The notes below the pieces were generated by a model. That model was not told where the DNA came from and did no database searches. It saw nothing but the letters and a program-made list of their open reading frames with translations. A program made the position numbers and the translations under genes. A stretch of DNA of 60,775 nucleotides, counting the filler, from Trichosphaerium sp. ATCC 40318 (taxonomy: Eukaryota > Protista > Tubulinea), in the NCBI GenBank assembly GCA_038496445.1. It is 4 parts of 4 records of this genome, joined end to end, with 100 filler letters (N's around TTAATTAATTAA, not from the genome) between each part and the next. Parts side by side here need not be neighbours in the genome. Positions count along the whole stretch, not along the records: positions 43,365 to 54,842 come from JALMLS010000163.1; 3 more parts are not named here. The stretch is one strand, 5' to 3'. Of this stretch, positions 1 to 54,842 are shown one piece after another. The number at the start of each line of letters is the position of its first letter. The first letter of the stretch is position 1.

Positions 1-541
1 GATGACCCGTGAAATAGCGTATGGGAGTACTGCTTGGGCGCATTACGCCATATTTAGTTGTACCATAACGCAATATCGCACCAATTGCCTCCTTCGCTTG
101 CACATGTTGTTTTTTGCTTGTACAGCGTTGCTACGAACAAACGCATGGCTACTGACCAGTAACGCTTTTAAGTGTACCTTGGACGATCGTTTACGTTATT
201 TAGCCCCTAATACTAAGAATACGCACCGTTGCGCTTATCTTAGGAGTACCTCATTGGAGTTAATCGGACATTCACTTATTTTCACCAATTCGTCTGTTTG
301 ACGCCTAAAAACTCTACTGTAGTGGTAGAATTTCCTCGTACAACGATTTTCACCTTTTAAAAAGATCGCCGTTTAAAAAATGGCGCCCAACCAACAAAAC
401 ATATTAAACACTAGCGACGCAAGAAATGTACCTTAACGATACAAAAATGGTCTTCATTCTTCAATATTAAAGGCAGTTGACTTTCTCAGAATTTGAATAA
501 ATATCAAAACACCAAACATCCCAAACCATCTGTGACGCAAT

Positions 542-3500
542 ATGGGGCAAACCAATAGTCAATACGACAATCTTTGGAATAACATAGGGCAAGAACAAAC
601 ACAGTCCCTAAACAAGTGGAGAAAACAGCTTGAGCAGTTTCATAAGAAAGAGAGAGAGGAGTCAGAAGGTAAGAGATAGACATAGAAACTTGTAAAACCT
701 TTTTCGTATTTTCGCCTCAGTACATCACCTTTGGATTTTTAAAACATATCTAATATCGTATAGCACTACATGAGAAGGAGAAAACATTATGGGAGGCAAA
801 AGTAGATGCTGCAAAGACTTTGAAGGAGGAACTCGAGGAACGATTGGAACAAGCATATAATGGGTCTAGTAGCCTAGAAAAGCAGTTAGAAAGCGAAATC
901 GCAAAAGCGAGGTAATTTGGTAACTTTTAAAAACGGTCGCCAACGTTGTTGGAGAAAAAAAGTGTTTGAGTGTTTCTTTCGCTAGAACTAAGCGTTTGGA
1001 ATACTTTAAAATTGAAATTGAAGCAATTTGCCCAATTTGGAAAAAACTACTCTCGTTTCTCTTTGCGGAGCTCTCTCGGTTTTTTTCGCTTATATAGCGT
1101 TCTTACATGTTTTCTAGTGACTTGACGGCGGAGTTGCAAGGTCTACTATCAGCAAAACAGTTGCTGGAAGATACGAATAAAGCTCTTGAAGAAAAAATCG
1201 AAACTCTTGAAGAACTTAAAAAAGCAGAGACAAAAGTTCTTGAAGATGAGAAAAAGACCTTAGGAGAAAATATCGATGGCCTAAACGCAGAGTTAAAAGA
1301 TCTCAAAGATGAAAAAGAAAAACTTGATAATGATTTTACTCAACTACAAAGCGCACTTGTGGCACGTGACGGTTAAATATTTTTGAAACAAAACAAAACA
1401 GTTTTGGCGGCGACTTTTTTTATGTTTACTCGTATTGTAGGAGAAGGAGAAAGAGTTGGCTATAGCAAGTACATCCAAGGCTTTCCTTGAGGAAAAGTAC
1501 GTTTAATAAGACGATAACTGGCACTAGAGAATTCAGTTGTGATCTTTTTTTAATTGGGTTTTGAGTTTTATTTTTGTTGTATTTGTCTTATTGGGCTCTG
1601 TGCTTATTATTTCGCGTCATAGACTCGATGAGCTCGAGGCTGAATTATTGGCGGTAAAACAAAAATTAAACGAGACTGAGACGACTATGAAAGAGGCAGA
1701 GAGTGGGTTTGTATCAGAGATAGAAGGCTTGAAGGCTACAAATGCTAAACACGTCATTAACAGTGCTGCAGATAAACAATCCTTTGAGGTATTCTGACAT
1801 CATTGTTTTCTTCGCTAAACATTGTGTAGACAAAGTCTACGGCTTTACAGAAGTGTATAGATGATTTAACTGAAGAAAAAGAGGAGCTCATTAGAAAACT
1901 ACAAGAAGCAAATGACAAAAGAGAGTCAATAGAAGGAGATTTAAAGACTACTAACGAACAGCTACACGTCAAAGTCGCTACAACCCAAGAACAAAGCAAA
2001 GAGATAAATGACTTACTTGATAAGGTGCGGATAGTGATGATTGAGGTTGTACGCTTACCTGTGTTTCTAGCTCAATGCTTCAATCGCACAAGAAGCTCTT
2101 TTGAGCAAAAGGATTGAAGAAATTAATGCATCCTTTGAAGAGAAGCTTGATGCTCTTTCTGCTACGCTTGAGAGTACACAACAAGAGCTTAGCGACAGCC
2201 AAAAGCAATATTTACTTGCTGTGGAGGGACAAAAAGGTTAGATTGCTTGTAAAGATACTTACTGTTGTTCTAATCGTATATAATAGAGCTTCGACAAAGA
2301 GTGGATGCGTTAACAGAAGAAATAGAAAAAGAGCGTGCAAGTAACCAGGAATCAAGTACGTAAACACGTTTATTCAAAGAAGACCTTTTGATTGAATAAT
2401 TCAGTTTGAGCAAAAACCTATCTGATGAAATTCTTTTTTTTCTCACCTAGTTCTCTTAGAAGAGCAACGAATTGCACTTGAACAGCAACTTGAGACAACC
2501 AAGGCCAAGATTATTGAATTACAAGCTGAATTAGCTTCATTTGAGTCCTCTACAAAGAAGCAAACTGTATTCCATGCAACTGAAAAATTGAATTTGATGA
2601 ATCAACACAGAGAAGAACTCGAGGAGCTCCAAGCTGCCTTAGATGCACTTAAAAAGAATAAAGAAAACGTTGAAGATGCTTTCGCAAAGCTCAAGTCGAC
2701 ACATGCGGATCTAAACAAGCTCCTTGATGAAAAAATTGATATCATCCTACAAAGAGATGAAACGATTGACGCCATGAAGATTGACATGGAGGGTGTTAGA
2801 ACACGATATGCAGAAGCCCAAGAGGAATTACAACACCGTGATACAGACTTAGCTGATAAAACTGCCGAGCTGAGAGTGAGTGACATTGAGTTCAAAGTTA
2901 AGTAACTTTAAGCTAATCTCTTTTTACTTTAGGATTTACAAACTCGAATTGAACACCTTGAACCTTTCCAACAAAAATACACAGAGCTAGCAAAGCAATA
3001 CGTTGAATTAGAGGAGCAATTTGAGAGTACAAAAGAACTTTTAAAGTCTGCTCAAGATGGTTCTGAATCGCAAACAACACAACTTGAACAAAAGGCAAGC
3101 TTCAAGTTTTTAGTCTCACCCTAGTTTTAACTTTTTTTTGATTACAGGACCGTGAAGCCGCCCAAGTCCGTGAAGAGCTTAAAAAAGTCAAGGAAGCACA
3201 AGAGACACAAATGGAAGATGTACGATAAAACACACTTTTTGAAATTGTCACGTACTTATTGTTTTTTCAGCTTGGATCTCAACTTGAGGCCTTGGAAAAA
3301 TTCAAGGATATGTACAATACCTTGCGTGATACACATACAGAACAAGAGAAGGAGTTAAGAAAACTACAACGTCATAGTGCTGCTGAAACGGATAAAGCCC
3401 AATTGATGGAAATTGAACTTGAAGCAAAAGAAGCGAACCTTTCCCAGATTAGACAAGAATATGATAAAGATACTCGCGAATGGCAGGAAGAGCGCTTAGT

Positions 3501-43364: not shown

Positions 43365-43502
43365 AACGATGAACACGAACCTGACGAGGTTCTAGCAATG
43401 CCTTTTTGCCACTTGTAAACCCAACGAAAAATAACCGTTAACACCTTTTCTTCAATTTAAAAAAATGTTTATGTACAAAATTCGTTGTAGGTTATTTGGG
43501 TT

Positions 43503-44972
43503 TTACCAACCTTTTACATACACTTTGAAAGGGCTACCCTTTATATGCTTACCATACATAGTAGTGCTTATTGTGTACTCGGAATCCTTTTCCTGCAAGA
43601 AGCACTGGATATTGTACGTACCATTGTCATTATCCGTAATTTCAGGCTCTGAAAAAAAAAACTCAGTTAATATTTGGCCATTACTTACTTTTAAAAAAAA
43701 AACCCAACTTACTCTTTTGAACACCTGGACCTCTGACATCTACCAGGAATGGATCACCGCCCAGTAGAACTTGCTCACCATAAGTATCAATTCCCGTTAC
43801 AGAGAATACGTATGTGCTCTTCCACAGTGTAGTTTCTTCAGCTGTAATGTAACTATCTACACCTGCATCTATGTACGAATATAGATGTCAGTTGGAGGCA
43901 ATACAAGAAAGTAAAAATGTGTAATTAACATACTGGCCGTTACTGTAATCTCCACTTCGTTTGGTCGTAGAGTACATTTATCACCCTCTAAGTGCACTGA
44001 TAGTTTGTACACGCCATGCTTCCGTGGCTTGTAAGTAGCAACAAAATCTCCTTTGGTGCCAGACACTTCACCTTTAATTGTTTCTGGTCCTGTCAACTAA
44101 CAATCACGTGGTTAGTAATATATCCATATTGACGCAATGAAAAAATTATTCTGTACCTGGACTCTAACATAAGAAGCATCTAAATACTCAGCCGGCTTAT
44201 TTGTGCGTGTGTCAGTACACTTTATTGCAAAAGATGAGTAATAGTTAACTTTTGCGCATGTCAAGCCTTTCCCCTCCATTGCCATTGCAGTAGGAAGACC
44301 CAAACCCTCTGTAACAATACCTATTAACAAGTTGCGCAACAGGCCACCTTTATCGTACCTTCTCTAGGCGCCAATTCGGGCCAACAACGCATTGTAAATT
44401 TGAATTTACTTTCGCCGTTATACTGCATGTCTACGTCGTAAGAACCTCTACTTTCCGGTAAAAACGAGAAAGCATACGTCCCTTGCGCCACAATTAATGA
44501 TAGATGCAACGTAAGATGTAATTTGTACCTTTTATTTCGCAAGAAACAGATGGTCTATAATTATGTCTACGCGTAACGAATACGTCAAACTTGCCCTTAG
44601 CTTCGCTAGGTGCATTTGTTTTGACATTTATAACTAAAACTTTATATTCCGCTACGCATTTCAAATCTACAACTTCTGGACCTTGCAAATTGAATTTTAA
44701 GTCGTCATCATTGTAACTCTACTAGCGGTGAGTGTTCTGGAGAATTGGGTGCGGAATTAATAACGTACCATCTTAAGATCACTGGGCGCTATATGTGGAG
44801 CTTCTGCTTCGCTAGTACTTATGCTCAACACTCCTATTTTGATGACGACTTTTGAAGAAAACGTGAATTACTGCTTTTATTTTATTTATTGGTTCTAAAG
44901 TGGTTATACCAGCTTTTACTGTTGCAGTCGACCGAAAACGCAATTTGTGACAGCCACACCAAACGGGTTCAT
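43503..44972 (-). CDS. Filamin/ABP120-type Ig-repeat protein; multi-exon, 5' end uncertain
   Basis: Motifs GTYAFSFLPESRGSYDVDMQYNG, MEGKGL, GDFVATYKPRKHGVYKLSV and DNDNGTYNI...GKHIKGSPFKV. Confidence 0.8.
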
Positions 44973-45825
44973 CACAGCGTGAAGTAATTACCTGAAAATT
45001 TTTTTCCTCTTTTCATAACGTTATTGATTGCTGCGTTCGTTTTGGCGGTTTCGTTGGCGGTTTGGTAAGGGTCGTTGCGATTCGCGACGCACAGGAAAGG
45101 AGGAACGGAGGTAAAACGAGCGAATTCGGGACATACAAAAGCAAAAATGAAGTGTACCAAGTAGTTTTGTGGATTTTTTTTTTTTAATGGATACTCCAAA
45201 TTTCAAAAAAAAGAGCGTACAGTACGGTTTGAGTCCAAATCGAGCGTTTGAACGCGAAGAAGAGAGAATCAAGGGGCTCCAGGGGCAAAGGAAAATAAAA
45301 AAGAGCGTAACTGTTTGGCGCGGGCGGGCACAACGCTGAAAAGTTTTTTTTTGGGTCGCATTTTTCTGGAGATGAACCAAAAAACCGCGATAAAAAGTGC
45401 TGTAAGCGATGTTTTTGGAATGAAAAGTGAAGCCAGGGACCGTGAAAACTGGGTATTTTCAGGAAAGAGTCCCAGTCTTACAACCGTGTAGCCTAACGGA
45501 GGCGTAAATGGAGAAAAGACTATGAGGCACCAACGAAAAAATAATTCCCCTAAACCGCCAGGCGATTTGCCTGCGAGGAAGGGCGTTAAAAAAAAATGAG
45601 CAGTTGGGCGCGTACAGAAATCGATTCTCTTCCCTTGGCGAAATTGAGAAGACAAAAAAAAGGATCGGTCAGTCGCGAGCGTACAATTTTGTATGCATCT
45701 TAAAAAAAAAAACCGCGCAGCCTTTGTTATTCCCAACGAAAGAGCCCACAGGGAGTGCACGATGACTATGGGTCCGCCCGTCGTGCAGCACATTTGCGGT
45801 GACTCTGCTATCACACTTGAATCAT

Positions 45826-47103
45826 ACTCCTATACGTTGATCGAGTGCTGAGGGTAGAGAGCAAGGACCTAGGACGCTGTTGTCTTCTACCACATAAGCA
45901 CCCTATATTGGAAGATTGTAATATTAAAAAGCTTACATCAGTACAAAGGGCAGTGGTAATCGATTTCTGCCTCAACATCTGAGAATATATGGTGGCATGT
46001 CTCTCTGTAAACTACAGAAACAGGTCGCCAAGCATAGCGGAAAGGCTAGTCTGTATTCATCTATCGCGAGAACAAGAAACTTTATTGAGTTTTTGTGAGC
46101 GTTTTTGAGCATATGACTGTAAGTCCTGTTTGCTGTGCAACCTCAGTAAAAATCCCTTTCTTCTAAAGTGAAGATTGGATATCAGCGTTTTAGTTGCGCT
46201 TACGCACATGCACATACACCACAGTGATGGCTACTCTAGCTTTTCTTATGTGATAGAAAAGGACGAGTTATCACTCGCCTCTTAGTATATCCATCGATGA
46301 CGATGCCAGTTGGTTATGTGTGTATGTAATAAGCAGCTATTTTAATACTGTATCCACTTCCAATAACAGAGGGTTCTCTTCTAACATTATAACGCACAGT
46401 TTTAAAAAAAATTTTGAAACTAGCGTAGAAATGTTAATCGAGTCCTTGGGTATGTGTATGTAACTCTCAATGAGACACATAACAACGACACCTAATAATG
46501 GTGAACGTTGTTTAGTGACACGAAAGTAGTCCGCTTATGTATATCGTTTGAGATACAACACCATCATTGTCCCGAGTGGGCAAAATGGTATTGTTTACAA
46601 ACACATAGACAATTTGTACACTCCTCCTTCATCTTATCTCTGTTATGAAAATATAACAGATTGATAAAGAGATGTCGATCGAGTCATTTGTCATCAACAT
46701 GCTGTAAATGAGTTTTGTGGCCCTCAGTGGGCAATAGCTTAGAACAGTCAATACTTTAAGCATTTAGTATGAAGCCCTCAGTGGGCAACAACTAACATGT
46801 TTACAAACAGAGATGATATCTTCTAGCATTAGAACACTTTGAAGTGTAGAAATGCTAATCGAGTCATACTGATAGACTTTCGTTCTCTTCTAGCATTAGA
46901 GCACTCACTAAGAGGTGTAGAAATGCTAATCGAGTTGCAAGTCTTAAAAGTATATGTTTCCAAGTTGATCACACCAATACGGTAGTGTACAAAAGAATGG
47001 CAGATTGAAGCCCTTAGTGGGCAACGGCCTACCATATGTATGAACTTGTGTTTCTCTTCTAGCATTATAACACCCATTTGGAGTGTAGAAATGCTAATCG
47101 AGT
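45826..47103 (+). repeat. Array of two interspersed hairpin motifs in the rDNA upstream spacer (probable 5' ETS)
   Basis: Motif A (CTC-TTC-stem...stem-ATCGAGT) occurs at about 46376, 46621, 46818, 46885 and 47054, with a short form at 45826. Motif B (GCCC-TYAGT-GGGC-AA) occurs at 46720, 46774 and 47010, with a variant at 46569. Confidence 0.75.
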
Positions 47104-47816
47104 TCAGAGTCATACAACAATACAGCTCTAAGTCATGCTTAGGTGGACGACAGGAGTCAAAGTGCTCCAATCAATCCGCAAAAGCTGTATCACATCCAAA
47201 ACAACCCAATGGAAAGACAAAGTATCAAGTACTTGGGTAATAATAGATGTGAGCCTGAAGCAGAAATGTGAAAAGGGCAAATTGACGGAAAGGCACACAA
47301 GCCAAGTACATCAACACAACAAGTGTAGCCAAGTTGCTACAACTTGAAGACTCAACAAGGAAAGGCACAGTCCAAGTACTTGCATAGTAAACAAAATCAA
47401 AAACAAAAAGAGTGTATGAAAAATGATGCAGTTGCAAGCTATTACCGACGATGCCTCAAGGGCTACTCAGTAAAAAATAGGCATGACTCATCAAGAAAAG
47501 TAGTCCTTTAAGACACAACCCTATGCTGTTGTGGCAATGTGCTCTATGAGCATCTCTTGCCATAAAAACCATAACCAAGACACGTCAGCTTCTTCTCCAA
47601 CAAGAAAGGCTGGTGTTGTCCGGCACCAGGTATTTGTGATGTTCATCAAAAAGACCTTCATCTTACATCCTCCTTGAAAGAGAATAGGAATAAGGATTGA
47701 ATGGTTTCTTATGAAGTTCATTCTTCAAAAAACCACCTAAAAACCTCAACCACCTTTGGTCTGATGAGAATTTATTTTAAATGCAGCTGTCTGCTTTAAA
47801 ACTCTGATGCAAAAGG

Positions 47817-50468
47817 TACCTGGTTGAGCCTGCCAGGAGTGATAAGCTTTCTCGAAGGATTAAGCCATGCAAGCTCAGCAAAGAGGTATCCTCGGAGCCG
47901 CAAACGGCTCCTTAAAACGGTCGTAACCCACCCGACAAGACTAATAATGGTCACGTCATTTTGCACACAGGAACTCGTTTTCCTAAACGCACTATAACCA
48001 AAACTCGTGGCCTCCCCCGCGGATAACCGGGATTAAAGGAAACCTGCGGCTAATACGTAATGCGCCTAGCGCTGCCGATGGGCCCCTCTGCTGCAAGGAC
48101 CCATCGGTCGCATCCAACGCTCAGGAGCGGACGATCACCCGATCCCATCTTGGTTCGCCAAGGGAAGCAGCCTCCCCTTAGGAAGCGGCGTCCGTACTCC
48201 GTCGGGAAGAGCGGCGTTGGGGCATGCGATGGAGTTATGAGGAGTTCTCTCTGACTAGACATGTTTCTAAAAAAAAATGTTAAAGTTTACATAAGTGAAA
48301 CTAGGTGAAAGAAAAATGAACATTGTTCAAATCTCGATCCTTCGCTGAATGTGCTTTTTCATAAAAAAGATCATATCGATATAAAGTTGAGAGTTCTCCC
48401 CCTCCACGAGTCGGAAGGGCGGCCGACCTATCAGCCAGGCGGTAGGGTAACGGCCTACCGCGGCAGTGACGGGTAACGGGGAACTAGGGTTCGGTTCCCG
48501 GAGAAGGGGCATTAGATACGGCCCCTGTACTTACGGGTAACAGCAGGCGCGTAACTTGGCCATTGATTGCAAATCGAGCCAGCGACTGAGTGTAACGAGG
48601 CCGGCATTTAAACCGGTCGTCGCAATGAGGGGCAACTGAATGTCGCCCTGAGAAACTATTGGAGGACAAGTTGGGTGCCAGCACCCGCGGTAACACCCAC
48701 TCCGAAAGCTTATACTTTTGCTGTTGCTGTTAAAGCGCTCGCAGTCCAAACAACGACACAGCTGAGAGGGACAAGGTTTAGATATAAGAATTTATTCTTT
48801 GACAAACCCCCCGACTCTTTTTCATCGCCCGACCAGGCATAAATGGCTTCGCTCAAACGCAAGGTCAGTTTAGGCTTCGGCCGCTATGCCACCCACCAGC
48901 ATCCTGGAATTGGGCTTTAAAAAAACAAAAAACAACACTTTACCAAGTGCGACGCTCAAGTCTCATTTTACTAAGTATGAACAATATCCTAAATGCAAGT
49001 CTGAGTGAAAACTCATGTTCTTCATTAAGGGAATAAAAACATTGTGAATTACAAAAAGTATTTTTGAGAAAAACTTGAGTTAGTCTTCACACTAATAAAG
49101 AACACACGATTACTAGGTGCGTACGGGGTAGAGAGTGTGGTATCAGCGAGGAGTGAAATCTTTTGACCTGATCCAAACTACCCGAAGCGAAGGCGCTCTG
49201 CAAGGGCGTGGCCGGTGATCTAGAACGATGGTGGAGGGAGCGAAGCGGATTAGAGACCCGTGTAGTCTCCACAGTAAACGATGCCGACTGAATGGGCGCC
49301 GGGCAAACCAAGGCTCGGGGCCCGTTCCCACGGGAAACCGAAGTAATCGGGCCCAGGGGGGAAGTATGGTCGCAAGGCTGAAACTTAAAGGCATTGACGG
49401 AGCAACACCACCAGGCTCTGGAGGCTGCGGCTCAATTTGACTCAACGCGCGACAACTTACCGGGATCGGACGCTCTAAGGGGACGAACAGACTGAAGGGT
49501 CTTTTCCGAGTTAGCTAACGGTGGTGCATGGTCGTTTTAGGCTCGTGGACTTATCTGTCAGGTTTATTCCGATAACGGGCGAGATCGCTACTGTCACATT
49601 GATTCCCCCGCCTCGTGCGGGACCCCTGTGCAGGACTGACGGCGAAAAGTCGTAAGAAGCGGCGGCTATAACAGATCCGGGATGCCCCCAGATATTCCGG
49701 GCCGCACGCGGCCTACACTGCTTAGTTCAACGGGTTCCTGGGCCGAACAGGCATCCGGGCAAGCCCTGAAACCGCCAGAACACTTCTTCACGACAGCGAG
49801 TTAAACCTCAGATTTTATTATCTAAATACGACTACACTTAAACGCACCTTCGGAAACTACCACCTTCAAAACAAAGTCTGTCCTGAACCTAATATAAAGA
49901 GTTAACCCCCTCGTCGAGGCTTTTTAGGAAGTTAAATTCCTTTAATGTTAAGACGAGAAGCGCTGTTAGATGAAAACTTACATCTTTGGACTTTGTTCCT
50001 TAGTGTAAACATTGAAAGAGCTGTGGATCGTTTCAAATTAACAAACAAGGTTTCTTCTTCACTTAAATGCTTTGACTTGGAAGATTATATCTTTACCAAG
50101 GCAAACTTTATTATGAAGTAAGTTTCTGCAATGTTCATAAAAAAATACATGAAAGCGCACCGTGTGGTCGATTTGGATGTTAAGTGTGCTCAATGCTGCT
50201 TCTTCGAAAAGACACATGCGTGCTTAGGGACTGGTTGCTGTAACTGTAGCCACGAACGCGGAATGCCTCGTACAGGTGTGTCATCAACGCACCTGGAATC
50301 TGTCCCTGTTGCTTGTACACACCGCCCGTCGCATCGACCGATGTGGGTGCGAGTGAGACCAGGGGGACGACCGGCTTGCCGGTTATCGAACCTGCTCGAA
50401 CTTGCGCTCATAAAGGATGATGAAGTCGTAACAAGGTTTCAGTAGGTGAACCTGCTGAAGGATCAATA
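47817..50468 (+). rRNA. 18S rRNA: 18S rRNA, highly divergent, about 2.65 kb including AT-rich inserts
   Basis: Conserved blocks TACCTGGTTGAGCCTGCCAG, GATTAAGCCATGCA, GTGCCAGCACCCGCGGTAA, AAACTTAAAGGCATTGACGG, GGTGGTGCATGG, TTGTACACACCGCCCGTC and AAGTCGTAACAAGG...GAAGGATCA. Confidence 0.96.
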
Positions 50469-50707
50469 CTATTGGTATTTAACCCTTAGAAGCAATTAAA
50501 CCAACTTTTAACCAAGTTTAAAAGAAAAAAATTGGAGTATCAGCTCTGGTTTGGTAAATCTGATCTTACTTCGGTAATTGAAGATGTAATCATCCTCTGC
50601 TGTGGTGATATCTTGTATATCTGCCAGCTCCACAACCGCCATTTTGGCAAACCAAAAACACAGTCGTGGCACGACTATAAAGAACGTCAAGATTTTCGAA
50701 AGAAACC
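50469..50707 (+). other. ITS1
   Basis: AT-rich spacer between the 18S 3' end and the 5.8S-like block; boundaries approximate. Confidence 0.75.
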
Positions 50708-50873
50708 AAACCTTGTCGGTGAACGGTTAGGCACCTCCCCCGAAGAAGGCCATGGATCACTATGAAACCAGCCACCGGAATCGCTCTCATCTGAAGGTGG
50801 CATTGCCGAATGCCTCAGGCCGCGTTCTGTATTCTCACGAATCACAGGCAAAGGAGCGTGACTCAGCGACGCC
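50708..50873 (+). rRNA. 5.8S rRNA: 5.8S rRNA, divergent
   Basis: GC-rich block of about 165 nt with CGAAGAAGGCC and CCGAATGC equivalents of the GATGAAGAACG and TGAACGC motifs. Its 3' end GTGACTCAGCGACGC pairs with the 28S 5' GCGTCCTGAGTTAC. Confidence 0.8.
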
Positions 50874-51077
50874 AGCAAAACAAACACTAAATTTATTTGG
50901 TGCTGCGTATGGTGTACACACTTAATCTTCTAAAAAAAGAAAGTGGTTGCCACAACTAATTAATAAATTGCCGGAAGTGATGTTCCTCCAGAACTCATGC
51001 CTAGCTTACTTAAGCGAAGCTTTAGAGGGAAGGTTGGTTTACATACTGAACTGAAAGCATTAAAAAAACACAACTTG
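50874..51077 (+). other. ITS2
   Basis: AT-rich spacer between 5.8S and 28S; boundaries approximate. Confidence 0.75.
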
Positions 51078-53689
51078 CGTCCTGAGTTACACTTGGCGAC
51101 CTGCCTAAGTTAAGCATATCATTGGGGCAGAGGAAAGGAAACCAAAAGGGACTCCCTGAGTAGCGGCGAGCGAAAGGGGACAAGCTCAAGCCTGAATCCG
51201 AGCCTAGCATCGGAGTTGTGGGCTAAGGCGTGGTGGCTCTTCCAGACGTTGACGGGAATTACGCACGAGTCGTAGCCGTAGAGGGTGCGAGCCCCGTACG
51301 CTGTCAACCGAGGAAATAGAGTCCCATCGTCCAGGAGTAGTATGGTTTGGCCGTGCCATACGAAGTTACCGGGAGGTTACCCGGCAAGGCTAAGTATCGG
51401 GAGGTGGCCGATAGCGCACCAGTACCGTGAGGGAAGACTGAAACAGCACTCCTCGATAGAGGGTTAAAAGACCCGAAGCCGGCAAGGGTACAAATGGCAC
51501 GGAGTACGTAGGTGCCCTGCACCTAATCTGCACATGGCAGACGCTCTTGTAGCGAGGGAAAAGCGACCGGGGCCTTGTGCCCTGGAAGATTATAATGAAA
51601 CAAAACGTCGAGGGGAAAGTAATAGAGGTGACCAACACAAAAAAGTCATACTGGCTAATTGTGCTGTCCACACCATCCTACAAGCTGAAGAGCATAAAAA
51701 CGTGGGTTTGGTTGAAAGGACATCAAAAAGCACTTTTAAACCTTTAAATGATGTTGGTTCACTGAAACTACTGAAACCTCCGAATGTACGTCTTCTTCCG
51801 AAAGGAACGAAGTTCGTCATTCATCGTCCACAACCTCAATGAGGCTCTATGCCCTTATTGGGCCATGGCCTCCGTGTATCCCGTCTTGAAACACGGATCA
51901 AGGAGTTCGCCGAGCGTGCGAGGGTGAGAGATCAAACCTCCAACCCGCACAGAAATGAAGCCAAGGATAAGCTCCTAGGCCGTCAAGTTCTTTATATAAA
52001 AACAAACGTATTGCATTTTACATGTATAAGTTTGCAAAGATCGACATAAAAAACCGACTATGCTATTATCATGTTTTTATGTTACGCAAGTAATTAAAAA
52101 CACGTCACACCAAAGTAGATACACTTTGCCATCTCCGGCGTTGTTCTCTTGGCAGGCGATAGTACGTTGGGCGATACCCGAAAGGTAGCGATCTATACCC
52201 GAAAAGGGGGAAGGCGGGAGAAATCCCGCTGGACGCCCGTAGCGTTGCTGACGTGCAAATCGCTCGCCGGACATTGGGTATAGGGGCGAGAGACCAAACG
52301 AGCTGCCAACGTAGCTGGTACCGTTCGAAGTATCCCTAAGGATAGAGGGGGTCCGTGACGCCGGTCTCGTCTCGTAGAGCCACTGGAAAGAGGTATCGGA
52401 GGCCAAAGTTGCCATCGACCTATTATCAAACACATAAGAGGCGACCGATCACAGGCCGAATGGCTGTGATCACCGAGACGGTGGACCCCTATTGGGCCGG
52501 TCTTGATAAGCAGGACTGACGAGACGGTTTTAAACGCGAGCAGCAGCAAAGGCGCCCGAATAGGCAGTAACCAAGACAACGAAGGCGGTGTTCCAGTTTA
52601 GACAGCTGGAAGGTGGACATGGAAGTCGTCATCCTCTAAGGAGTGAGTAACTTCTCACCAGCCGAATTGGGACGCGCCGAAAATGGATGGCGCTAAACTG
52701 CCTTAGCCGCCGCTGCGCGATCGCCCCGGCTCGGCCCAGGGTGCGGTAGGACGGCGTGCTGGTGGCGTAGAAGGGGGGCGGTGGCGTCCACCCGGAGCCA
52801 CCAGCAGTGATGATCTTGGTGGTAGTAGCAATTGGAGCCTGGTGAAACAGTGTTTATCACAGCCAGGTCGCCCAAGTGGGGAAGGGTTTCGCGGTGATGG
52901 CATTCAGCTGCGAGTTAGCCGGTCCTAAGCCAGCTCCTAATAGAGTATACTGTTTGATGCTGGCAGACGACACTTGTTTGATGAACTTTACAAGTCTTGA
53001 AGATGGTGGAAGTCTGCGATGCTTTCAACTCGGCGAAAGGCAACCTGGTGAGTAATCCAGGGCATGGGTAAGGAGGATGCATTTGCTTTAGAAGTGGCAA
53101 CACTGAGAGAGAGAGCGCACGCGAGCAACCACACTTCTGCGGGGCCTTCTCCCGCGCCTAAGCTATTCGAGGGAAACTCCCCGGAGCCACGTAAAGCGGC
53201 GAAGGGAAAGAGTCGAGGGTAGCTAATGGGAAAGCACTTTTGCTTTCTAGGGGTGTTGGTGAGCTCGTTCTCACGAGGCTGCTCCTCTCCGAAGCCGACA
53301 CTTTCGGGTGTTCAGTGTCCTCCAGGCTCATACCGTACCGAAAACCGCATCAGGTCCCCTAGGTTAGTCACCTCTGGCGCTGCACGGTGTAAACGGCGTA
53401 AGGGAAGTCGGCATACGCGGCCCGTAACTTCGGGAAAAGGGCTGGCTCTGCTGACCGGGACCCGGGACGACGTGTATCTGCGCTACTTCAGTGTAGCCCC
53501 TTCGGGAATGGTACACAGTCCCTGCAAAGAGGTCCACAAGCGGATCATGGCGGAACTCTCAGAAGCTTAGAGAACCCAACTGTTTACTTAAAACTTAGCC
53601 CTTTGATACCTCCTCTGAGGTCTGACAAAGGGTGACTCCTGCCCAGTGCTTTGAAAGTTGCGGTGCTTAATTTCACCCAAGCACGGGTT

Positions 53690-53739
<50 letters not shown>

Positions 53740-54455
53740 GTAACTAATGACGCGCATGAATGGATGAATGAGGTTCTCGCTGTCCCTACGCCGACCGTGG
53801 CGAAACCACAGAGTCGCGAACGGGCGACTTTTCTACCAGCGGGGAAAGAAGACCCTGTTGAGTTTGACTCTCACCACGCTTAGGGGCTTGGCACTGGAGG
53901 TATAGGGTAGGAAGTAGTTTTTTACGAAAGGTGTAACACTTCTACTCCGGAGGTCGGGCCCCAGACGCATTCAAAACGGGCGAAAGCGCCTGCCTCTTCG
54001 GAGGACGTGGCGCTGCTCGAACCATACAAGTCGGTTCTTAGGATGAGGCGGGCCCAATCGAAAGTGCGGATTACCTTCCGATTCCGAACTTTGACAAGCA
54101 TTAAGGCGGACAGCGCGTGGCCGGGAGTTTGGCTGGGGCGGCACATCCGCTATAGGGTAACACGGATGACCTAAGGGGAGCTCAGTGGGGACAGAAACCC
54201 CACGTAGAGGCCAAGGCTAAAAGCCCCCTTGAGCAAGAGTGGAGCCATCGCTCTTGCACCCTAACGGGAGGCCTAGAGATCCCTCGTGACTAGTCATGTA
54301 ACCTGACACTGGGGTGACAGAAAAATTACCATAGGGATAACTGGCTTGTGGTCGCCAAGCGCTCAGAGCGACGCGACTTTTTGATTCTTCGATGTCGGCT
54401 CTTCCTATCCAGGTGTAGCAGAATGCTCCAAGGGTTGGATTGTTCACCCACTTAC

Positions 54456-54499
<44 letters not shown>

Positions 54500-54842
54500 T
54501 TACCCTACTGGTGGGCCTATTTTATTAACATGCGCGTCGTCGGTAGCGATGCCTCAGTACGAGAGGAACGGGCATCGGTGGCCTCTAGTGTCCGCGGACG
54601 TCCGAGAGGGCGGTTCGCGAAGCCACGCCATTGGGAGTACGGCTGAAGGCCTCTAAAGTCGGAAACCCAGCCGCCAAGAGCCGCGCGGCGACACTGTCGT
54701 TGCTGCGCCTCCTCGAACGAAAGGCTTCGGCCCGCAAAGGTTCTACACTATGGCACAAGTAGCACGTCTTAGCAAACGCCCGCAGGGGCCCCGTAAACCA
54801 CGGGAACTCGAACAGGGTCTTAGGGCATTTACTGTTGTAAGC
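51078..54842 (+). rRNA. 28S rRNA: 28S rRNA, highly divergent, running to the gap
   Basis: Conserved blocks TTAAGCATATCA, GTACCGTGAGGGAA, CCCGTCTTGAAACACGGA, TAACTATGACTCTCTTAAGGTAGCCAAATGCCTCGTCAT, peptidyl-transferase region GATGTCGGCTCTTCCT and GAGCTGGGTTTAGACCGTCGTGAGACAGG, and sarcin-ricin loop AGTACGAGAGGA at 54556. Confidence 0.96.

What the first reader, a model, noticed from the sequence alone, without database searches (positions are those of the whole stretch)
47937..50217. AT-rich inserts in a GC-rich 18S: possible extra transcribed spacers and a fragmented cytosolic SSU rRNA
Four sharply bounded AT-rich segments (about 47937-48006, 48253-48389, 48920-49107 and 49776-50217) resemble ITS1/ITS2 in composition, not the core. 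The roughly 440-nt one interrupts the helix-41 3' strand, where GAAAC and CGTG are normally about 5 nt apart. It folds back on itself (CGACTACAC near 49829 pairs with GTGTGGTCG near 50162). No GT-AG ends or group I core were seen. Established: Euglena and trypanosomatids excise extra spacers from LSU rRNA. Inference: these inserts are excised without ligation, spliced by an unknown route, or retained as giant novel expansion segments.
Basis: partly seen in the sequence, partly recalled or inferred. Interest (0 to 1): 0.8.

Follow-up and report, generated by a model that had tools for sequence, protein, structure and literature searches.

The report
Spacer-like AT-rich inserts in 18S rRNA
A marine protist's 18S rRNA gene carries three to four AT-rich inserts that look like transcribed spacers and are about a thousand times rarer than the core in one deep RNA library, which hints that its small-subunit rRNA may be made in several pieces, something not yet described for a cytosolic ribosome.

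Summary
The piece is one complete eukaryotic rDNA unit: 18S 47817-50468 (2652 nt), a very divergent 5.8S, and 28S 51077-54697. The first is marginal. A two-state composition model that finds the known ETS, ITS1 and ITS2 boundaries also picks out these three inserts, plus two more in the 28S. No intron family matches and no insert ORF has a Pfam match.

Contigs of four public RNA libraries were laid on the region. In the one deep library of the same strain (X9), core contigs reach 10^4-10^5. Contigs carrying inserts 2-4 reach only 41-175, about the same as ETS (155) and ITS1 (23). No contig joins core to core across an insert, although a 60-nt junction contig elsewhere was detected. A relative carries diverged inserts at the same sites.

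Best reading (about 0.5): the inserts are extra transcribed spacers removed without ligation, which gives a multi-piece 18S. The main rival (about 0.27) is that they are giant retained expansion segments, as in every long 18S I know to have been tested (from memory, apart from Euglena). The evidence comes from assembled contigs only. Mature RNA ends were not seen, so this remains unproven.

The parts
47817..50468 (+). 18S (SSU) rRNA gene, 2652 nt
   Evidence: Rfam RF01960, full model 1-1831, 1029 bits
47937..48006 (+). Insert 1 (5' part of V2), 70 nt, GC 0.39. Marginal: not called by the composition HMM.
   Evidence: X9 contig 47903-48059 spans it at depth 459 with 100% identity.
48235..48395 (+). 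Insert 2 (V2/ES3S region), AT-state segment, GC 0.30. Closing stem 48241-48251 with 48389-48399.
   Evidence: X9 contig 48208-48390 has depth 109, against 1.7e4-1e5 in the flanking bins.
48916..49115 (+). Insert 3 (V4/ES6S, inside h21), AT-state segment, GC 0.29. Its ends pair. The RNA-level low-depth zone begins earlier, near 48752-48804.
   Evidence: (z -3.45). X9 contig 48804-49026 has depth 175. The X18 relative has 244 unlike letters in place of 48924-49107.
49776..50217 (+). Insert 4 (V8, h41/ES10S), 442 nt, GC 0.36. HMM AT core 49801-50154. Folds as one rod-like hairpin.
   Evidence: (z -4.40); (z -3.45). X9 contig 49750-50331 has depth 41.5, against 4.7e4-2.1e5 just upstream.
49819..49837 (+). 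5' arm of the 9+9 bp helix that closes the central part of insert 4
   Evidence: Pairs with 50162-50179
50162..50179 (+). 3' arm of the same helix
50469..50707 (+). ITS1, GC 0.37. Serves as the control spacer.
   Evidence: X9 depth 23-36.
50708..50871 (+). 5.8S rRNA, very divergent
   Evidence: RF00002 scores 27.8 bits, below the gathering score of 42; E 4e-5
50872..51076 (+). ITS2, GC 0.37
   Evidence: X9 depth 1.4e3-2.5e3.
51077..54697 (+). 28S (LSU) rRNA gene, 3621 nt
   Evidence: RF02543, model 1-3401, 1727 bits
51586..51776 (+). AT-state insert in 28S, D2 region, GC 0.37. Same composition class as the 18S inserts.
   Evidence: (z -2.49)
51985..52127 (+). AT-state insert in 28S, at the top of a D3 hairpin (158-nt insertion at model ~741-755), GC 0.28

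Best explanation
Inserts 2, 3 and 4, and perhaps insert 1 and the two like inserts in the 28S, are extra internal transcribed spacers. They are transcribed as part of the pre-rRNA. Each folds back into a hairpin domain closed by its own ends. Each is then cut out during maturation, as ITS1 is, and the flanking rRNA is not re-joined. The mature small-subunit rRNA would then be four or five separate GC-rich RNAs, about 1.8-1.9 kb in total, held together by the normal rRNA helices and ribosomal proteins. Shown here: the inserts have spacer composition, their ends pair, they lie in variable regions, and they are rare in the one deep RNA library, with no junction contig. Inferred: cleavage without ligation, the number of pieces, and their exact ends.
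For: (1) Composition. Inserts have GC 0.29-0.36, ITS1/ITS2 0.37, and mature parts 0.53-0.61. An HMM that recovers four of five known spacer borders within 5 nt calls the same three 18S segments.
(2) RNA library X9. Its 5.8S/ITS2 contig is 100% identical to the window at depth 1369, so it holds the same strain. Core bins reach 1.4e4-2.1e5. The contigs carrying inserts have depth 109 (48208-48390), 175 (48804-49026) and 41.5 (49750-50331). The ETS contig has 155 and the ITS1 contig 23. In a de Bruijn assembly a word belongs to one contig, so the insert words themselves are rare (inference).
(3) No joint skips any insert in any of the four RNA runs. The method did report a 30+30-nt junction contig at 48059->48141 at depth 3266.
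(4) In X9, depth rises with the size of the putative piece. It is about 0.3-1.4e3 over 47817-47936, 0.5-1.7e4 over 48007-48252, 1e5 over the 530-nt piece and 0.5-2e5 over the 668-nt piece. That fits separate molecules recovered by size (inference).
(5) X20, a seawater metatranscriptome, has core contigs only and zero depth in the bins that lie wholly inside inserts 2-4 (its bin 50141-50261, which straddles the 3' border of insert 4, reads 88).
(6) The ends of inserts 3 and 4 pair as strongly as the ends of ITS2: z -3.45, -4.40 and -4.09.
(7) The five GC-rich pieces sum to 1815 nt, an ordinary 18S size.
(8) No intron family or ORF family matches.
Against: All RNA evidence is assembled contigs. 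The tool says depth is one figure per contig and should not rank parts of a gene. It also says holes prove nothing, and the core bin 49052-49172 reads 0 in X9. The last 250 nt of the 18S, which are essential, are also low in X9 (56-473), which needs a technical excuse such as small-RNA loss or the human-likeness filter. The low-depth zone in V4 includes a GC-rich stretch (48804-48919), so the composition borders and the RNA borders do not coincide. In X17 and X18, contigs run from core into insert at core depth, though ETS has the same depth there, so these may be DNA or precursor. For Euglena gracilis, expansions within the 18S are reported as not removed from the mature rRNA (PMC9082867). 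From my own memory, the same holds for other long protist 18S rRNAs. No mature 5' or 3' ends were seen.
Confidence: 0.5

Rival explanations
1. The inserts are giant expansion segments (ES3S, ES6S, ES10S) that stay in a single 2.65-kb mature 18S rRNA. The low depth in X9 and X20 would then be an artefact of contig assembly, filtering or strain divergence.
For: All inserts lie at classical expansion sites. They fold into rod-like hairpins, as expansion segments do. A relative (X18) keeps inserts at the same sites in one 2270-nt contig from an RNA library. Euglena 18S expansions are reported as retained (PMC9082867). The tool warns against reading depth from contigs, and a core bin also reads 0.
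Against: In X9 the insert sequences are present, but at 41-175 against 1e4-2e5 for the core. This holds in the same strain, since the 5.8S/ITS2 contig is 100% identical, and it matches ETS and ITS1 levels. A retained segment should share the core's depth. In X17 and X18 the core is no deeper than the ETS, so those contigs do not speak for mature rRNA. GC-rich and AT-rich expansions sit side by side with sharp borders, which is odd for a single class of retained segments.
Confidence: 0.27
2. The organism has two kinds of rDNA unit, as Plasmodium has A and S types. The window holds a weakly expressed or silent kind with AT-rich variable regions. The abundant rRNA in X9 would come from another kind whose variable regions are too different to be laid on the window.
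For: Unitigs break where two variants diverge, so an abundant unlike variable region would not have been laid on the window (inference). X9 does hold variant forms: the 48059->48141 joint at depth 3266 and a diverged contig at 48605.
Against: The 5.8S/ITS2 contig of the abundant form is identical to the window at depth 1369, and the contig across insert 1 is identical at depth 459. None of what was laid in X9 runs on into unlike sequence (share 0). The 3' core after insert 4 is also low, which a shared core would not be.
Confidence: 0.1
3. The inserts are introns of an unrecognised kind, removed with ligation of the flanking rRNA.
For: Low insert depth in RNA would fit this too.
Against: No group I or II or any other intron family hit at E<=10. 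No GT..AG ends. The insertion sites are variable regions, not the conserved core sites that rDNA group I introns use (my own knowledge). No core-to-core junction contig appears in four RNA runs, although such a junction would be the most abundant form and a comparable junction contig was detected elsewhere.
Confidence: 0.05

Closest known systems
Additional internal transcribed spacers in the 28S rRNA of Euglena gracilis (14 LSU pieces) and metakinetoplastids (6 pieces)
   Same: Spacers sit in variable regions of a Pol I pre-rRNA and are removed without ligation, leaving pieces that assemble non-covalently (PMC9082867, PMC10573304, PMC4008552). In the window the inserts are likewise in variable regions, have spacer composition and are rare in RNA.
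   Different: Those cases affect only the large-subunit rRNA, and their 18S is one molecule. Here the small-subunit rRNA would be the split one. The 28S has at most two candidate sites, D2 and D3, which do not match the kinetoplastid pattern. Excision is not shown here.
Enlarged SSU expansion segments of euglenids, kinetoplastids and other protists with long 18S rRNA
   Same: Same sites (V2, V4, V8), a similar total length (2.1-3 kb) and hairpin-like folds. The window also has the motif CACCCGCGGTAA, found in a primer used for trypanosomatid 18S.
   Different: Those expansions stay in the mature rRNA (stated for E. gracilis in PMC9082867). Here the insert words are about 1000 times rarer than the core in the one deep RNA library, and the insert composition matches the spacers rather than the rest of the rRNA.
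Bacterial intervening sequences (IVS) in 23S and, rarely, 16S rRNA, cut out by RNase III without ligation
   Same: A hairpin insert closed by a long stem at the tip of a variable helix, and fragmented but working rRNA (my own knowledge).
   Different: Those are bacterial, are usually 100-200 nt, and the enzyme is known. Here the unit is a eukaryotic nuclear one, the inserts reach 442 nt, and the enzyme is unknown.
Group I introns in nuclear rDNA
   Same: Extra sequence inside an rRNA gene that is absent from the mature rRNA.
   Different: No covariance-model hit. Group I introns use conserved core sites, not variable regions. No ligated junction was seen.
Hidden break (gap deletion) in 28S rRNA of insects and other protostomes
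   Same: An AU-rich stretch in an expansion segment is removed, which gives two pieces held by base pairing (PMC9082867 discussion).
   Different: It is a single site in the LSU. Here there are several sites in the SSU.

Membership tests
Additional ITS / segmented cytosolic rRNA | The extra sequence lies in a variable region of the rRNA gene, inside the Pol I transcription unit | tested here: met
   V2, V4 and V8/h41 by cmscan alignment. RNA-library contigs join ETS to core and insert to core.
Additional ITS / segmented cytosolic rRNA | The extra sequence is absent from the bulk of mature rRNA | tested here: inconclusive
   In X9 the insert contigs have depth 41-175, against 1e4-2e5 for the core and 155 and 23 for ETS and ITS1. 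This points to absence but rests on contig depth only.
Additional ITS / segmented cytosolic rRNA | The flanking rRNA parts are not ligated, so the mature rRNA is several molecules | tested here: inconclusive
   No joint across any insert in four RNA runs, while a 30+30-nt junction contig elsewhere was reported. Absence in contigs is not proof.
Additional ITS / segmented cytosolic rRNA | Discrete 5' and 3' ends of the mature pieces | not testable with these tools
   Only Logan contigs were served, and table 6 is empty. Adaptor-abutted contig ends (47829, 48027, 48417, 48752 in X20) also occur inside cores (48699, 49279 in X9), so they do not mark ends.
Retained expansion segment | Located at a known expansion-segment site and folds as a helix extension | tested here: met
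Retained expansion segment | Present in mature rRNA at the same level as the core | tested here: inconclusive
   X9 speaks against it, with an insert-to-core ratio near 1e-3. X17 and X18 show contigs joining insert and core, but at ETS-like depth.
Group I intron | Conserved P3-P8 catalytic core detectable by covariance model | tested here: not met
   No Intron_gpI or any other intron family hit at E<=10 over 47817-50468
Group I intron | Ligated exons in RNA | tested here: not met
   No junction contig in four RNA runs
Spliceosomal intron | GT..AG ends | tested here: not met

The most novel reading that the evidence does not exclude
This protist builds its cytosolic small ribosomal subunit from four or five separate rRNA pieces, cut from one precursor at AT-rich spacers in V2, V4 and V8. 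Its 28S may also be split at D2 and D3. It would be the first segmented cytosolic SSU rRNA that I could find described, arising in a lineage with otherwise compact rRNA cores.
Probability: 0.5. Interest if true: 0.85.

Novelty: new variant of a known kind. Interest (0 to 1): 0.68.

Why it matters
Segmented cytosolic rRNA is known only for the large subunit. The reviews read here list the 18S of Euglena and trypanosomatids as one molecule (PMC10573304, PMC9082867), and a full-text search for a fragmented nuclear 18S found only organelle cases or unrelated uses of the phrase. A split SSU rRNA, with a break next to the base of h41 in the head and another inside h21/ES6S, would show that the 40S subunit tolerates discontinuity as the 60S does. 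It would give a natural test of Gray's idea that spacers and variable regions interconvert (PMC4008552). It would also raise the question of which nucleases make the extra cuts.

There is a practical side. RNA integrity scores, 18S-based quantification and long-read rRNA barcoding would all misbehave for this organism. If the inserts are instead retained, the finding is an ordinary, though large, set of expansion segments.

Tried and rejected
- **Intron models.** Rfam at E<=10 over the 18S gave only chance hits.
- **Coding capacity.** Five ORFs in or across the inserts had no Pfam match.
- **Relatives for covariation.** Two exact-pattern scans of JGI metagenome contigs found nothing or 7 chance hits with no rRNA. 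Scans of GTDB genomes and IMG/VR found nothing.
- **Fetching rDNA contigs through spurious ORFs.** Six exact look-ups of window ORFs failed. Two of the three word searches failed. One LSU ORF found two Logan contigs of relatives, L008 and L009, 96.4% and 95.2% identical. They cover only the 28S core, 52166-53719, and say nothing about the inserts.
- **Identifying the organism.** Euglenozoan-type motifs are present. The 18S lengths of Perkinsela (1970), Papus (2022), Bodo (2148) and Diplonema (2051) do not fit 2652. The two SRR numbers appear in no paper. The lineage stays open.
- **Shared border motifs.** TTCATAAAAAA occurs near the 3' ends of inserts 2 and 4. GCWTTAAAAAAACA occurs at the insert 3 border and just before the 28S 5' end. 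These may be chance in A-rich sequence and are not used as evidence.
- **Adaptor-abutted contig ends as RNA termini.** Rejected, because they also occur inside cores.
Full report
**What the piece is.** Rfam covariance models place a complete eukaryotic 18S at 47817-50468 (2652 nt, model 1-1831, 1029 bits). They place a complete 28S at 51077-54697 (3621 nt, 1727 bits). The 5.8S lies at 50708-50871 and scores only 27.8 bits, below Rfam's gathering score of 42. The rRNA of this organism is therefore very divergent. ITS1 is 50469-50707 and ITS2 is 50872-51076. Upstream, 43365-47816 is IGS/ETS with no convincing gene. It holds short sub-repeats at 46374-47133.

**Check of the observation.** The sliding profile and direct counts confirm three strongly AT-rich stretches inside a GC-rich 18S.
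- The five stretches between them have GC 0.53-0.61.
- The first segment (47937-48006, GC 0.39, 70 nt) is only mildly different.

A two-state GC hidden Markov model run over 47600-54842 puts the 18S 5' end at 47815, the 5.8S at 50711-50876 and the 28S 5' end at 51077. All four borders are within 5 nt of the covariance-model calls. It misses the 18S 3' end by 59 nt. The same model calls three AT segments in the 18S: 48235-48395, 48916-49115 and 49801-50154. It also calls two in the 28S: 51586-51776 and 51985-52127. In this unit, composition separates known spacers from mature rRNA well, and by that measure the inserts belong with the spacers.

**Where the inserts sit.** The cmscan alignments put insert 2 in V2, where about 330 extra nucleotides replace model positions ~127-202. 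Insert 3 lies in the h21/ES6S stretch of V4. Insert 4 lies in h41, which is V8.

For insert 4 the sequence shows UGAAAC at 49767-49772 and CGUG at 50219-50222, 446 nt apart. The posterior on that side is low. Whether the insert breaks the 3' strand or extends the tip is therefore open.

The two 28S inserts lie in D2 and at the top of a D3 hairpin.

**Structure.**
- Each insert folds as one hairpin-like domain closed by its own ends. Whole-insert folds give z -3.45, -2.53 and -1.92 against dinucleotide shuffles.
- Duplex energies between the first and last ~90 nt are better than shuffles for insert 4 (z -4.40, 0 of 300) and insert 3 (z -3.45, 1 of 300). They are similar to the ends of ITS2 (z -4.09). 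Inserts 1 and 2 show no such excess.

These folds fit both a retained expansion segment and a processing stem, so they do not decide the question.

**What the inserts are not.** No group I, group II or other intron family reaches E<=10 in the 18S. Five ORFs in or across the inserts have no Pfam match. The stated borders have no GT..AG ends. The inserts share no long repeat with each other or with the IGS.

**RNA evidence.** The look-up of sequencing runs listed 20 runs from 11 studies that hold the 18S or a part of it. Many are marine, and all are kept as Logan contigs. I laid four runs recorded as RNA, from four studies, on 47600-51200, so that the ETS, ITS1 and ITS2 served as internal controls.

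*X9, the informative run.*
- 226 of its 317 laid contigs are at least 99% identical to the window.
- Its contig over the 5.8S 3' end and ITS2 (50825-50963) is 100% identical at depth 1369. I take this to mean X9 holds the same strain.
- Core bins read 1.4e4 to 2.1e5.
- The contigs that carry the inserts read 109 (48208-48390), 175 (48804-49026) and 41.5 (49750-50331).
- The contig across the ETS/18S border reads 155 and the ITS1 contig reads 23.

A word of a de Bruijn assembly belongs to one contig, so these figures bound the abundance of the insert words themselves. That step is my inference. The inserts therefore behave in quantity like ETS and ITS1, at about 10^-3 of the core.

*No junctions.* No contig in any run joins core to core across an insert. 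The method can see such joints. It reported a junction contig with 30 letters on each side at 48059->48141, depth 3266, in X9.

*Depth follows piece size.* Depth in X9 also rises with the size of the putative piece, which fits separate molecules recovered by size:
- the 120-nt stretch, 0.3-1.4e3;
- the 246-nt stretch, 0.5-1.7e4;
- the 530-nt stretch, about 1e5;
- the 668-nt stretch, 0.5-2e5.

*X20.* This seawater metatranscriptome has core contigs only and zero depth in the bins that lie wholly inside inserts 2-4 (its bin 50141-50261, which straddles the 3' border of insert 4, reads 88). Its ITS2 differs by 9 letters and 17 gaps, so its inserts may simply be too diverged to lay on the window.

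*X17 and X18.* Both are shallow, with core depth of 8-24. The ETS has the same depth as the core there, so these contigs may come from DNA or precursor.

*The X18 relative.* One 2270-nt contig in X18 carries unlike sequence of different length at the V4 and V8 sites: 244 letters for 182, and about 292 for 260. The stretch 48818-48924 and the outer parts of insert 4 are conserved in it. A relative thus has inserts at the same places, with fast-evolving centres.

**Weak points.**
- The tool states that contig depth should not rank parts of a gene and that holes prove nothing. The core bin 49052-49172 reads 0 in X9.
- The last 250 nt of the 18S, which no ribosome can lack, read only 56-473 in X9. 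This needs loss of a small RNA or the human-likeness filter as an excuse.
- The low-depth zone in V4 begins near 48752-48804 and includes a GC-rich stretch. The RNA borders and the composition borders therefore do not coincide.
- Insert 1 is spanned by a 100%-identical contig at depth 459, between its neighbours' values. Its fate is open.
- Adaptor-abutted contig ends occur near some borders (47829, 48027, 48417, 48752 in X20) and also inside cores (48699, 49279 in X9). I do not read them as RNA ends.

**Prior knowledge.** For Euglena gracilis, expansions within the 18S are reported as not removed from the mature rRNA, and additional ITSs are described only in the 28S of euglenids and metakinetoplastids (PMC9082867). 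Reviews of segmented ribosomes list the 18S as a single molecule in Euglena and trypanosomatids (PMC10573304; PMC4008552). A phrase search for a fragmented nuclear 18S or SSU rRNA returned only organelle cases or unrelated uses of the phrase. The prior for retention is therefore high, and the prior for a split cytosolic SSU rRNA is low.

**Weighing.** The X9 result is hard to explain if the inserts are part of the bulk rRNA of that strain. It is also hard to explain by splicing. It could still arise if the abundant rRNA came from a second rDNA type with unlike variable regions, because such regions would not have been laid on the window. My odds:
- 0.50 for spacers removed without ligation, giving a multi-piece 18S;
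- 0.27 for retained giant expansion segments, with the depth contrast an artefact;
- 0.10 for a second rDNA type;
- 0.05 for introns of an unknown kind;
- the rest unassigned.

**Lineage.** The window has CACCCGCGGTAA at the 530 loop. This is the start of a primer used for trypanosomatid 18S in seven papers. It also has GCTGTTGCTGTTAAAG, which I recall as euglenozoan. The 18S lengths tabulated for Perkinsela, Papus, Apiculatamorpha, Bodo and diplonemids are 1970-2148 nt, which does not fit 2652 nt. The unbroken 3.6-kb 28S resembles prokinetoplastids and diplonemids rather than metakinetoplastids or euglenids. No relative was found in JGI metagenomes, GTDB genomes or IMG/VR. Two Logan contigs (SRR24154936, SRR26350440) hold 28S cores that are 96.4% and 95.2% identical.

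**Verdict.** A gel, a Northern blot or long RNA reads would settle it quickly.

Noticed in passing
window 51586-51776 and 51985-52127: The 28S has two AT-state inserts of the same composition class as the 18S inserts (GC 0.37 and 0.28). One lies in D2 and one at the top of a D3 hairpin. If the 18S inserts are spacers, the 28S may be split there too. No RNA data were laid on this stretch.
   Followed up: partly
window 50708-50871: The 5.8S rRNA is so divergent that Rfam scores it at 27.8 bits, below the gathering score of 42. It was found only with the E-value threshold.
   Followed up: partly
window 48059-48141: RNA run X9 holds a junction contig at depth 3266, with 30 letters on each side, that skips 81 nt (48060-48140) of the GC-rich V2 hairpin. 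The ends are AT..CC and there is no microhomology. It may be a second rDNA variant or a relative. It is unexplained.
   Followed up: no
window 50872-51076 (ITS2) versus 50469-50707 (ITS1): In X9, ITS2 stands at depth 1.4e3-2.5e3, against 23-36 for ITS1. In X20 one contig at depth 621 runs from 5.8S through ITS2 into the 28S. ITS2 may be removed late, or may be kept in part of the molecules.
   Followed up: no
window 50218-50468: The 3' end of the 18S (h42-h45) has only depth 56-473 in X9, although the core just upstream of insert 4 has 4.7e4-2.1e5. This could be loss of a separate ~250-nt RNA or the tool's human-likeness filter. I could not tell which.
   Followed up: no
window 48358-48368 and 50134-50144; 48914-48930 and 51057-51073: TTCATAAAAAA occurs exactly near the 3' ends of inserts 2 and 4. 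GCTTTAAAAAAACAAAA at the start of insert 3 resembles GCATTAAAAAAACACAA, which ends 4 nt before the 28S 5' end. These could be processing signals or chance in A-rich sequence.
   Followed up: partly
window 46374-47133: The IGS upstream of the 18S holds three to four copies of short sub-repeats, such as AGYGTAGAAATGYTAATCGAGT and TTCTCTTCTAGCATTA, spaced about 70, 170 and 420-440 nt apart. This is typical of rDNA spacer promoter or enhancer repeats.
   Followed up: no
L008 (SRR24154936) and L009 (SRR26350440), matching window 52166-53719 and 52304-53717: Two Logan contigs of relatives were found through a spurious 114-aa ORF in the 28S (53226-53570). They are 96.4% and 95.2% identical in the 28S core. 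L008 begins with an Illumina adaptor 38 nt after the end of the second 28S insert.
   Followed up: partly
window 48682-48693 and 48720-48735: The 530-loop region reads CAGCACCCGCGGTAACACC, where most eukaryotes have CAGCAGCCGCGGTAATTCC (my own knowledge). The CACCCGCGGTAA part matches a trypanosomatid 18S primer. This hints at Euglenozoa, but the tabulated 18S lengths of known kinetoplastids and diplonemids do not fit.
   Followed up: partly
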